A DNA stretch of 63,202 nucleotides, the filler included, from Octopus bimaculoides (Eukaryota), in assembly GCF_001194135.2 (NCBI RefSeq). It is 10 parts of 9 records of this genome, joined end to end, with 100 filler letters (N's around TTAATTAATTAA, not from the genome) between each part and the next. Parts side by side here need not be neighbours in the genome. Positions count along the whole stretch, not along the records: positions 23,218 to 37,419 come from NC_068991.1; 9 more parts are not named here. One strand, given 5' to 3'. The notes under the pieces were generated by a model. It was not told the DNA's origin. It saw only the letters and a program-made list of their open reading frames with translations, and did not search any database. How positions within the stretch are numbered: the stretch's first letter is position 1; every line of letters begins with the position of its first letter. A program made the position numbers and the translations under genes. Shown here piece after piece: positions 29,440-29,565 of the stretch.

Positions 29440-29565
29440 TTGCCAAGAATTTATCTCTCTCATCGAAGATCGCTGGCTATCGGACGCTGACGAAGGGAAA
29501 TAACCCTGAAACCCGGGTCCGTTCGTGCTACAGATCACGATGAGAGGGATAACTTCCCTTGGCAA
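29440..29565 (+). ncRNA. Type I hammerhead ribozyme with extended stem I
   Basis: Stem I cggacg (29481-86)/cgttcg (29520-25); CUGACGA 29487-93; stem II aggg/ccct with loop aaataa; GAAA 29508-11; palindromic stem III ACCCGGGU; GUC cleavage triplet ending at 29519; outer arms 29440-29471 and 29533-29565. Confidence 0.8.

What the first reader, a model, noticed from the sequence alone, without database searches (positions are those of the whole stretch)
29440..29565. Complete type I hammerhead ribozyme at the tip of a ~126-nt rod-like hairpin
Seen in sequence: every core element is present in the right order and pairs. Stem I is cggacg/cgttcg (6 bp, one G-U), followed by CUGACGA, stem II aggg/ccct with a 6-nt loop, GAAA, and a GUC cleavage triplet (cut predicted after 29519). 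Stem I continues through a small internal loop (tggc/gcta) into ~30-bp arms (ttgccaag...ctctcatcgaagatc / gatcacgatgagaggg...cttggcaa). Stem III is the short palindrome ACCCGGGU. Established knowledge: animal type I hammerheads with a weak palindromic stem III occur in Penelope-like element LTRs and non-LTR retrozymes (schistosome Sm-alpha, newt satellite 2), where they can cleave as dimers and release circular RNAs. Inference: this may be a cephalopod retrozyme or PLE-associated ribozyme family, and a tandem partner could lie in the adjacent gap (29599-30089). I cannot tell whether the family is already described.
Basis: partly seen in the sequence, partly recalled or inferred. Interest (0 to 1): 0.9.

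Follow-up and report, generated by a model that had tools for sequence, protein, structure and literature searches.

The report
Octopus type I hammerhead ribozyme copy
A small self-cutting RNA motif (hammerhead ribozyme) of the kind carried by animal "retrozyme" and Penelope-type mobile elements sits in repeat-rich octopus DNA; the motif is real, but it is an ordinary single copy of a known kind of element.

Summary
At 29481-25525 every hammerhead element is present in type I order: helix I of 6 bp, CUGACGA, helix II of 4 bp with a 6-nt loop, GAAA, the 8-nt palindrome ACCCGGGU, and C17 at 29519. Helix I continues into about 32 bp of arms, giving a 126-nt hairpin (z = -7.2).

A descriptor scan finds only this hit in the 14.2-kb piece, and none in 40 Mb of simulated sequence at strict settings. 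A covariance model built from three published, in-vitro-active coral, mussel and axolotl retrozyme hammerheads hits it full length (23.7 bits, E about 3e-5). That is above 100 chance matches to the same core (at most 18.2 bits) and below phage type I hammerheads (mostly 30-40 bits).

Rfam RF00163 reports nothing for it. The 10.1-11.1 pair is A-U rather than G-C.

Two copies are predicted to fold into a double hammerhead through the palindrome.

One paralogue exists in Octopus bimaculoides, seen only as a spurious 54-aa UniProt ORF.

The piece holds no second copy and no Penelope RT or GIY-YIG ORF. A 491-N gap starts 33 nt downstream.

Verdict: a canonical metazoan retrozyme-type hammerhead, probably a solo copy. 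It is a new member of a known kind, and its activity is untested.

The parts
29441..29477 (+). 5' arm of the rod: the extension of helix I beyond loop 1
   Evidence: With the hammerhead pairs enforced, 32 pairs form with 29527-29564. Whole-hairpin z = -7.2.
29478..29480 (+). Loop 1, 5' side (UAU). The 3' side is the single U at 29526.
   Evidence: Constrained fold. It lies exactly 6 bp from the core, where type I hammerheads carry the loop that contacts loop 2 (PMC4209133).
29481..29486 (+). Helix I, 5' strand (CGGACG)
29487..29493 (+). Catalytic core box 1: C3 U4 G5 A6 C7 G8 A9 (CUGACGA)
   Evidence: It is identical to the Rfam RF00163 consensus CUGAcGA.
29494..29507 (+). Helix II (AGGG/CCCU, 4 bp) with the 6-nt loop 2, AAAUAA. 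The closing pair 10.1-11.1 is A-U rather than the usual G-C.
29508..29511 (+). Catalytic core box 2: G12 A13 A14 A15.1 (GAAA)
29511..29518 (+). Helix III palindrome ACCCGGGU (A15.1 to U16.1). In a monomer it gives 2 bp plus a CCGG loop. Between two copies it gives an 8-bp duplex.
   Evidence: the duplex is -14.9 kcal/mol, and the cofold minimum of two cores is the double hammerhead.
29519..29520 (+). Predicted self-cleavage site: after C17 (29519), before 29520
   Evidence: Position follows from the hammerhead numbering. Cleavage itself is not tested.
29520..29525 (+). Helix I, 3' strand (CGUUCG)
29527..29564 (+). 3' arm of the rod
29566..29598 (+). 3' flank that still belongs to the repeated element. 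It runs up to the assembly gap.
   Evidence: The minus-frame translation QLAYRHTSVSC matches QLAYRHTTVSC of the O. bimaculoides paralogue P0001.
29599..30089 (.). Assembly gap of 491 N. It hides the 3' end of the element and any tandem partner.

Best explanation
This is a genuine type I hammerhead ribozyme sequence of the canonical metazoan design used by non-LTR retrozymes, the small non-autonomous relatives of Penelope-like retroelements. It lies on the + strand of a dispersed repeat in an octopus genome.

Proposed mechanism, with what is shown and what is inferred:
- Shown: the sequence can form the three-helix junction around an intact core (CUGACGA / GAAA / GUC).
- Predicted: helix III is only 2 bp in a single copy. 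Its 8-nt palindrome ACCCGGGU lets two copies pair into a double hammerhead. The two copies could be neighbouring units of one transcript or two separate RNAs.
- Inferred from the family: in that dimer each core cleaves after C17 (29519), leaving a 2',3'-cyclic phosphate and a 5'-OH. In active retrozymes the released unit is ligated into a rod-like circular RNA that is copied back into DNA by a Penelope-type reverse transcriptase.
- The long arms that extend helix I are the start of that rod.

This particular copy is most likely a solo (monomeric) insertion or relic, not part of an active tandem array. No partner is visible, and the 10.1-11.1 pair is the suboptimal A-U.
For: - All core elements and helices sit at the stated positions.
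- It is the unique descriptor hit in the piece. The same settings gave none in 40 Mb of simulated sequence.
- Model R1 was built only from the coral Amil224, mussel Mg353 and axolotl Ax353 retrozyme hammerheads. Their sequences come from Suppl. Table 2 of PMC7229834 (alignment; model). R1 hits 29478-29528 full length with no non-canonical pair, at 23.7 bits and E about 3e-5. The next best hit in the piece scores 10 bits.
- 100 metagenome loci chosen to carry CTGANGA..GAAACCCGGGTC reach at most 18.2 bits.
- Helix lengths (6, 4, and a short palindromic helix III) equal the published definition of canonical metazoan type I HHRs. The 8-nt palindrome parallels mussel ACGCGCGU and axolotl ACACGUGU.
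- Element lengths are the same as in the Rfam consensus aUccag-CUGAcGA-GUCC-CAAAUA-GGAC-GAAA-CG[2]CG-UC-cuggAu.
- RNAcofold of two cores gives the double hammerhead as the minimum: -35.5 kcal/mol against -30.0 for two separate monomers.
- The hairpin is more stable on the hammerhead strand (z -7.2 against -4.3). It holds three G-U pairs that would be A-C mismatches on the other strand.
- A second copy exists in O. bimaculoides at 88% amino-acid identity over the translated hairpin and its 3' flank.
- Penelope-like elements are present in octopus genomes (PMC13282606).
- Monomeric retrozyme copies are common in other animals (bioRxiv 10.64898/2026.07.22.740005).
Against: - Rfam RF00163 and all other hammerhead models report nothing, even at E <= 10 on 63 nt. 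The library does hold the model, and it scores phage type I hammerheads at 25-30 bits.
- The R1 score of 23.7 bits is below twelve of the thirteen pattern-selected phage type I hammerheads (30-40 bits; one scored 20.5).
- G10.1-C11.1, described as highly conserved, is A-U here.
- The unconstrained minimum-energy fold uses a competing CGGAC/GUCCG pairing. It is 7.6 kcal/mol better than the hammerhead fold.
- There is no second copy, tandem or otherwise, in 14.2 kb.
- No covariation data are available.
- The one paralogue must differ at positions 16.2 and 17. The Gly-Pro to Val-Ser change implies GGGTCC changed to something like GGATAC (inference). This stays within the allowed R-U-H rule but breaks the palindrome unless 15.2 changed as well.
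- No cleavage or expression data exist.
Confidence: 0.62

Rival explanations
1. It is a fragment of a Penelope-like element's terminal repeat (pLTR), not a retrozyme. On this view the hammerhead processes PLE transcripts, and this copy is a truncated PLE end.
For: - PLE pLTRs carry hammerheads near their ends, and retrozymes are related to pLTRs.
- PLEs exist in octopus.
- PLEs favour insertion into microsatellites, and this locus is full of them.
Against: - Metazoan PLE hammerheads are described as minimal. They have no or almost no helix III, a helix II of 6-8 bp, a helix I of 4-5 bp and an unpaired base between positions 9 and 10.1. This motif has none of these traits.
- No RT or GIY-YIG signal was found in the open stretches of the piece that were tested.
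Confidence: 0.2
2. It is a dead relic. The sequence descends from a hammerhead-bearing element but can no longer cleave, and it has no present function.
For: - A-U at 10.1-11.1.
- A competing fold that is 7.6 kcal/mol more stable.
- It is a solo copy beside a SINE and microsatellites.
- Only a moderate model score.
- No Rfam hit.
Against: - All 11 invariant core bases, U16.1 and H17 are intact. All 12 helix pairs are standard and the palindrome is perfect.
- An active axolotl retrozyme hammerhead tolerates a U-U mismatch at the same helix II position.
Confidence: 0.3
3. It is a chance hammerhead-like match inside an unrelated foldback, MITE-like or hairpin repeat.
For: - Bare descriptor matches are expected a few times per Gb-sized genome (extrapolated).
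- The terminal inverted repeat TTGCCAAG...CTTGGCAA looks like a small foldback element.
Against: - The canonical 6/4 helix lengths, the perfect 8-nt palindrome of canonical size and a loop 2 of canonical length all coincide.
- The score is above 100 forced-core chance matches.
- The arms extend helix I in exact register.
- There is no target-site duplication at the hairpin ends.
- The paralogue's homology continues beyond the hairpin.
Confidence: 0.04
4. It is a host-domesticated ribozyme in an intron or UTR that regulates a gene, like the intronic HH9/HH10 hammerheads of amniotes.
For: Nothing specific. Solo type I hammerheads with such roles are known in vertebrates (discussion of isolated motifs).
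Against: - No gene, exon or conserved ORF is recognisable around it.
- It belongs to a repeat with at least one paralogue.
- It is surrounded by SINE copies and microsatellites.
Confidence: 0.04

Closest known systems
Canonical type I hammerheads of metazoan non-LTR retrozymes (coral Amil224, mussel Mg353, axolotl Ax353 and Ax330; newt satellite 2; Schistosoma Sm-alpha)
   Same: - Type I topology, a 6-bp helix I and a 4-bp helix II with a 5-6-nt loop.
- GAAA followed by a 6-10-nt palindrome as helix III (mussel ACGCGCGU, axolotl ACACGUGU, here ACCCGGGU).
- Helix I prolonged through an internal loop into further pairing.
- AT-rich surroundings.
- A predicted need for a dimer.
   Different: - A-U rather than G-C at 10.1-11.1.
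- The helix I and helix II sequences are unrelated to any published one.
- No tandem array is visible.
- Unit length and copy number are unknown.
- No expression or cleavage data exist.
Rfam RF00163 Hammerhead_1
   Same: Every element has the same length, and CUGAcGA, GAAAC and GUC are the same (consensus shown).
   Different: The model's strongly conserved GUCC...GGAC helix II, its CAAAUA loop and its helix I letters are not shared. No reportable score is obtained. Phage type I hammerheads also fall below the gathering score (25-30 bits against 34).
Minimal hammerheads of Penelope-like element pLTRs
   Same: An animal retroelement context, dimer logic, and palindromic positions 15.2-16.2.
   Different: The PLE motifs lack a real helix III. 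They have a long helix II, a short helix I and an extra unpaired base after A9. This motif has none of these features.
The 235 Hammerhead_1 loci annotated in the giant squid (Architeuthis dux) genome
   Same: Type I hammerheads in a cephalopod genome (PMC6962438).
   Different: Those passed the Rfam gathering score; this one does not. They were only counted, not characterised, so any relationship to this family is unknown.

Membership tests
Hammerhead ribozyme, type I | Conserved core C3 U4 G5 A6 N7 G8 A9 ... G12 A13 A14 ... A15.1-U16.1, H17, in type I order | tested here: met
   CUGACGA 29487-29493, GAAA 29508-29511, U29518, C29519
Hammerhead ribozyme, type I | Three helices around the core: helix I open, helices II and III closed by loops | tested here: met
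   6-bp helix I, 4-bp helix II, 2-bp helix III (8 bp as a dimer). All pairs are standard.
Hammerhead ribozyme, type I | Reaches the gathering score of Rfam RF00163 | tested here: not met
   No hammerhead match at gathering, nor at E <= 10 on 299 nt or 63 nt. Control: the model is in the library and gives 25-30 bits (GA 34) for clear phage type I hammerheads.
Hammerhead ribozyme, type I | Significant match to a covariance model built from experimentally active type I hammerheads, this sequence excluded | tested here: met
   R1 gives 23.7 bits, E about 3e-5, full length. Chance controls reach at most 18.2 bits. Positive controls score mostly 30-40 bits, with one at 20.5. The model rests on three sequences and its E-values are rough.
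Hammerhead ribozyme, type I | G10.1-C11.1 closing pair of helix II | tested here: not met
   A29494-U29507. The active axolotl HHR_Amex2 has a U-U mismatch there.
Hammerhead ribozyme, type I | Loop 1-loop 2 tertiary contact nucleotides | tested here: inconclusive
   Loop 2 is 6 nt (AAAUAA against the Rfam consensus CAAAUA; 3 of 6 identical in register). An internal loop UAU/U lies 6 bp from the core. The contact residues are shown only in figures that I could not read.
Hammerhead ribozyme, type I | Site-specific self-cleavage | not testable with these tools
   Needs in vitro transcription.
Metazoan non-LTR retrozyme | Canonical type I hammerhead (helix I 6 bp, helix II 4 bp, short palindromic helix III) | tested here: met
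Metazoan non-LTR retrozyme | Head-to-tail tandem repeats of about 150-450 bp, each with one hammerhead | tested here: inconclusive
   No second copy in the piece. A 491-N gap starts 33 nt after the hairpin. The paralogue's ORF suggests that a run of Leu codons, perhaps a trinucleotide repeat, follows rather than a second unit (inference).
Metazoan non-LTR retrozyme | Multicopy family in the genome | tested here: inconclusive
   One paralogue was found through a spurious UniProt ORF. No octopus genome was available to search. All other routes were empty.
Metazoan non-LTR retrozyme | Expressed as a small, highly self-paired circular RNA | not testable with these tools
   Only the 126-nt rod segment can be seen.
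Penelope-like element pLTR (minimal hammerhead) | Minimal design: no helix III, long helix II, short helix I, extra base between 9 and 10.1 | tested here: not met
   Compared with the description in PMC4209133
Penelope-like element pLTR (minimal hammerhead) | Adjacent RT plus GIY-YIG ORF | tested here: not met
   No such ORF appears in the ORF list or in Pfam scans of the ten longest non-repetitive open stretches. Heavily decayed remnants are not excluded.
MITE or foldback element | Terminal inverted repeats flanked by a target-site duplication | tested here: not met
   The hairpin ends TTGCCAAG/CTTGGCAA are flanked by ...ataaga and acagga..., with no duplication. The paralogue's homology runs past the hairpin.

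The most novel reading that the evidence does not exclude
This copy may represent an undescribed octopus- or cephalopod-specific retrozyme family. Its hammerhead has drifted far enough from the Rfam consensus to be invisible to standard annotation. The family may still be transcribed, self-cleaved as dimers and circularised, which would add a class of ribozyme-made circular RNAs to cephalopod transcriptomes.
Probability: 0.3. Interest if true: 0.45.

Novelty: new member of a known kind. Interest (0 to 1): 0.3.

Why it matters
If confirmed, retrozyme-type hammerheads would extend to octopuses. I found no paper describing them there; only a count of Rfam hits exists for the giant squid. The case also shows that Rfam-threshold annotation misses divergent but structurally complete hammerheads, so their numbers in animal genomes are probably underestimated. 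Beyond that it is an expected finding. Type I hammerheads with palindromic helix III are widespread in invertebrate repeats, and octopus genomes carry the Penelope-like elements thought to mobilise them.

Tried and rejected
- **Rfam.** Gathering on the piece, then E <= 10 on 299 nt and on 63 nt: no hammerhead hit. I checked that this is not a missing model.
- **Metagenome contigs.** The family-specific pattern gave 0 hits. The generic CTGANGA-N10-18-GAAACCCGGGTC pattern gave 120 loci. All were chance or coding matches; for example L022 is a repeated coding motif. They were reused as a chance control.
- **Translated-ORF route to octopus DNA.** The minus-frame peptide found one O. bimaculoides ORF, but its DNA is not on record. 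Window ORFs are not on record either. A plus-frame peptide found nothing.
- **Exhaustive phmmer search.** It returned five further 'hits' (P0002-P0006). They are long internally repeated proteins with 26-45% identity, whose many weak repeats sum to a high score, so I rejected them as artefacts.
- **BLASTN of 29261-29598 against the piece.** It found only the hairpin's own arms.
- **Pfam scan for Penelope RT or GIY-YIG.** Nothing.
- **Four-sequence alignment including axolotl Ax330.** MAFFT misaligned its GAAA, so it was dropped.

Full report
**1. What is in the sequence**

- Helix I: CGGACG (29481-29486) pairs with CGTTCG (29520-29525), 6 bp with one G-U.
- Core box CTGACGA (29487-29493).
- Helix II: AGGG/CCCT (29494-29497 with 29504-29507), closed by AAATAA.
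- GAAA (29508-29511).
- The 8-nt palindrome ACCCGGGT (29511-29518).
- C17 at 29519.

The order is helix I strand, CUGANGA, helix II hairpin, GAAA, helix III, UH, helix I strand. That is the type I topology.

With these pairs enforced, the flanks add 32 more pairs (29441-29477 with 29527-29564). They run through a UAU/U internal loop, a 4-bp UGGC/GCUA helix and two further small loops.

The 126-nt hairpin folds at -57.2 kcal/mol (z = -7.2) on the + strand, against -49.7 (z = -4.3) on the - strand. Three G-U pairs exist only on the + strand, the strand that carries the ribozyme.

**2. Is it more than chance?**

- A type I descriptor (CTGANGA, helix II >= 3, GAAA, U-H, helix I >= 4) finds this site and nothing else on either strand of the 14.2-kb piece.
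- In 40 Mb of first-order Markov sequence with the piece's composition, it found one relaxed hit and none with helix I >= 6 and helix II >= 4.
- Extrapolated, a Gb-sized genome could hold a few bare matches. The motif alone would therefore not be conclusive in a genome-wide scan.
- What settles it is the coincidence of independent features: canonical helix lengths, a perfect palindrome of canonical size as helix III, a 6-nt loop 2, and about 32 bp of arms that continue helix I in register.

**3. Model-based tests**

Rfam gave no hammerhead match at gathering on the piece. It gave none at E <= 10 on 299 nt or on 63 nt either.

To interpret this negative I fetched phage contigs carrying CTGATGAG..CGAAAC..GTC. 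They contain textbook type I hammerheads, yet none reached Rfam's gathering score. At the E-value threshold RF00163 scored them 25-30 bits against a cut-off of 34. So the model is present but narrow. Its consensus is aUccag-CUGAcGA-GUCC-CAAAUA-GGAC-GAAA-CG[2]CG-UC-cuggAu. This has the same element lengths as the octopus motif, but its helix letters are strongly conserved and the octopus motif does not share them.

I then built an independent model, R1, from three published retrozyme hammerheads that cleave in vitro: coral Amil224, mussel Mg353 and axolotl Ax353. Their sequences come from Suppl. Table 2 of PMC7229834 (alignment; model). Results:
- With filters off, R1 finds 29478-29528 on the + strand at 23.7 bits, E about 3e-5, full length and without a non-canonical pair. 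The next hit in the piece has 10 bits.
- Chance control: 100 metagenome loci selected to contain CTGANGA..GAAACCCGGGTC reach at most 18.2 bits.
- Positive control: twelve of the thirteen pattern-selected phage hammerheads score 30-40 bits, and one scores 20.5.

The octopus motif is therefore a significant but divergent match. R1 rests on three sequences and a shortened calibration, so its E-values are rough.

**4. Which kind of hammerhead**

Cervera and De la Pena define canonical metazoan type I HHRs as follows: helix I 6 bp, helix II 4 bp, and helix III 1-2 bp capped by a small palindromic loop. These work as dimers when a second copy is near (PMC4209133). They are the ribozymes of non-LTR retrozymes, which are short AT-rich tandem repeats expressed as rod-like circular RNAs (PMC7229834).

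The published constructs show the same helix III style: mussel ACGCGCGU, axolotl ACACGUGU and ACAUGU, coral ACAGUACUGU. They also show the same continuation of helix I beyond an internal loop.

The minimal hammerheads of Penelope-like element termini have a different design: no helix III, a long helix II, a short helix I and an extra base after A9. The octopus motif does not match that design.

One departure from the canonical design is A-U at 10.1-11.1, where G-C is described as highly conserved. The active axolotl HHR_Amex2 has a U-U mismatch at that position.

**5. How it would work**

As a monomer the hammerhead fold is weak. The 51-nt core scores -7.4 kcal/mol, against -15.0 for an alternative fold that pairs CGGAC with GUCCG. 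In the full hairpin the hammerhead fold is 7.6 kcal/mol worse than the minimum.

For two copies, RNAcofold gives a double hammerhead as the minimum-energy structure. It has an 8-bp intermolecular ACCCGGGU duplex and exchanged helix I strands, at -35.5 kcal/mol against -30.0 for two separate monomers. The palindrome duplex alone is -14.9 kcal/mol, stronger than the mussel or axolotl ones.

The most likely mechanism is therefore dimer-dependent cleavage after C29519, as in newt, axolotl and schistosome elements. Family knowledge suggests ligation to a circle would follow. Cleavage, ligation and expression are inferred, not shown.

**6. Relatives and context**

The piece is microsatellite-rich animal DNA with assembly gaps and no real long ORF.

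The minus-strand frame is open across the hairpin. Its 64-aa translation hits one database protein, the 54-aa 'uncharacterized protein' A0A0L8IHK6 of Octopus bimaculoides, at 88% identity. This is a paralogous copy, so the element is repeated and the host is an octopus.
- Homology continues through 29566-29598 up to the gap.
- The paralogue's N-terminus suggests that about 20 nt further on, a run of five Leu codons follows, which may be a trinucleotide repeat rather than another unit (inference).
- Its identical FQGYFPSSASDS stretch fixes C3, G5, A6, G8, A9, G12, A14 and A15.1 in that copy, assuming the Ser codons stay in the TCN box.
- Its Gly-Pro to Val-Ser change implies substitutions at 16.2 and 17 that still obey R-U-H (inference).
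- Covariation cannot be tested, because the paralogue's DNA is not retrievable.

No second copy lies in the piece. The sequence after the 491-N gap is unrelated. No RT or GIY-YIG signal was found.

Directly upstream (about 29104-29273, opposite strand) lies what I recognise from memory as the abundant octopus SINE. The 166 nt between it and the hairpin are 30% GC and of unknown affiliation.

**7. Literature status**

- I found no paper that describes hammerheads or retrozymes in octopus.
- The giant squid genome paper lists 235 Rfam Hammerhead_1 hits without further analysis (PMC6962438).
- A detailed O. vulgaris repeat annotation reports Penelope-like elements but mentions no ribozymes (PMC13282606).
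- Naiad-type PLEs, which lack hammerheads, survive only as remnants in cephalopods (PMC8557442).
- A 2026 preprint argues that animal retrozymes derive from PLE termini and that monomeric copies are common.

**8. Verdict**

It is a real, structurally complete type I hammerhead of the retrozyme type in an octopus repeat with at least two copies. Tandem organisation, PLE linkage and activity remain open.

It is a new member of a known kind and of modest interest. The side result is methodological: Rfam thresholds miss this motif and also clear phage type I hammerheads.

Noticed in passing
window 29104-29273 (- strand); also 31262-31360 (+) and about 31440-31510 (-): Copies or fragments of what I recognise from memory as the very abundant octopus SINE (motif ...ggcggtgctccagcatggccgcagtcaaaggactgaa...). 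The first ends about 166 nt upstream of the hammerhead hairpin, on the opposite strand. The hammerhead is not part of it.
   Followed up: partly
window 23218-37419 overall, e.g. 24241-24398, 27985-28194, 28561-28637, 34150-34329: Extreme density of microsatellites and short tandem repeats. Examples are an 18-nt unit GAGTAGGAGGAGGAGAAA x 8.8, (TA)105, (TTG)26 and an 81-nt AG-rich unit x 2.2. There are also several N gaps. Most 'ORFs' in the piece are translations of these repeats.
   Followed up: no
window 32555-32664: A 31-nt tandem repeat (TTGAGAATTACATTAAGAATACGCGAGAATTT, 3.5 copies, 64% matches) in otherwise non-microsatellite sequence. Its nature is unknown.
   Followed up: no
L169 2400-3884; L181 7647-9475; L154 849-1664; L131 583-963 (IMG/VR phage contigs): Clusters of three to four clear type I hammerheads within 1-2 kb of phage contigs, several lying shortly upstream of an ATG. 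All score below the Rfam RF00163 gathering cut-off (25-30 bits against 34) but 30-40 bits with my retrozyme-derived model. Rfam-threshold annotation would miss them.
   Followed up: partly
L022 1-200 (- strand), metagenome contig JACCDO011112995.1: Two matches to the hammerhead core pattern spaced 111 nt apart turned out to be a repeated coding motif (...KCVKCLTKQPxYGKPGS...), not ribozymes. This is an example of how core-only patterns mislead.
   Followed up: yes
P0002 (3655 aa; protein database hit): A predicted protein made of about 44 near-identical 82-aa tandem repeats, that is, a 246-nt DNA satellite read as an ORF. It surfaced only because many weak repeat matches added up, and it is unrelated to the finding. 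Its origin is unknown.
   Followed up: no
window 29481-29522: A competing pairing, CGGAC (29481-29485) with GUCCG (29518-29522) plus CUG/CGG, gives a rod-like inactive fold that is more stable than the hammerhead fold. This resembles the active/inactive conformational switch known from viroid-like hammerhead RNAs.
   Followed up: partly
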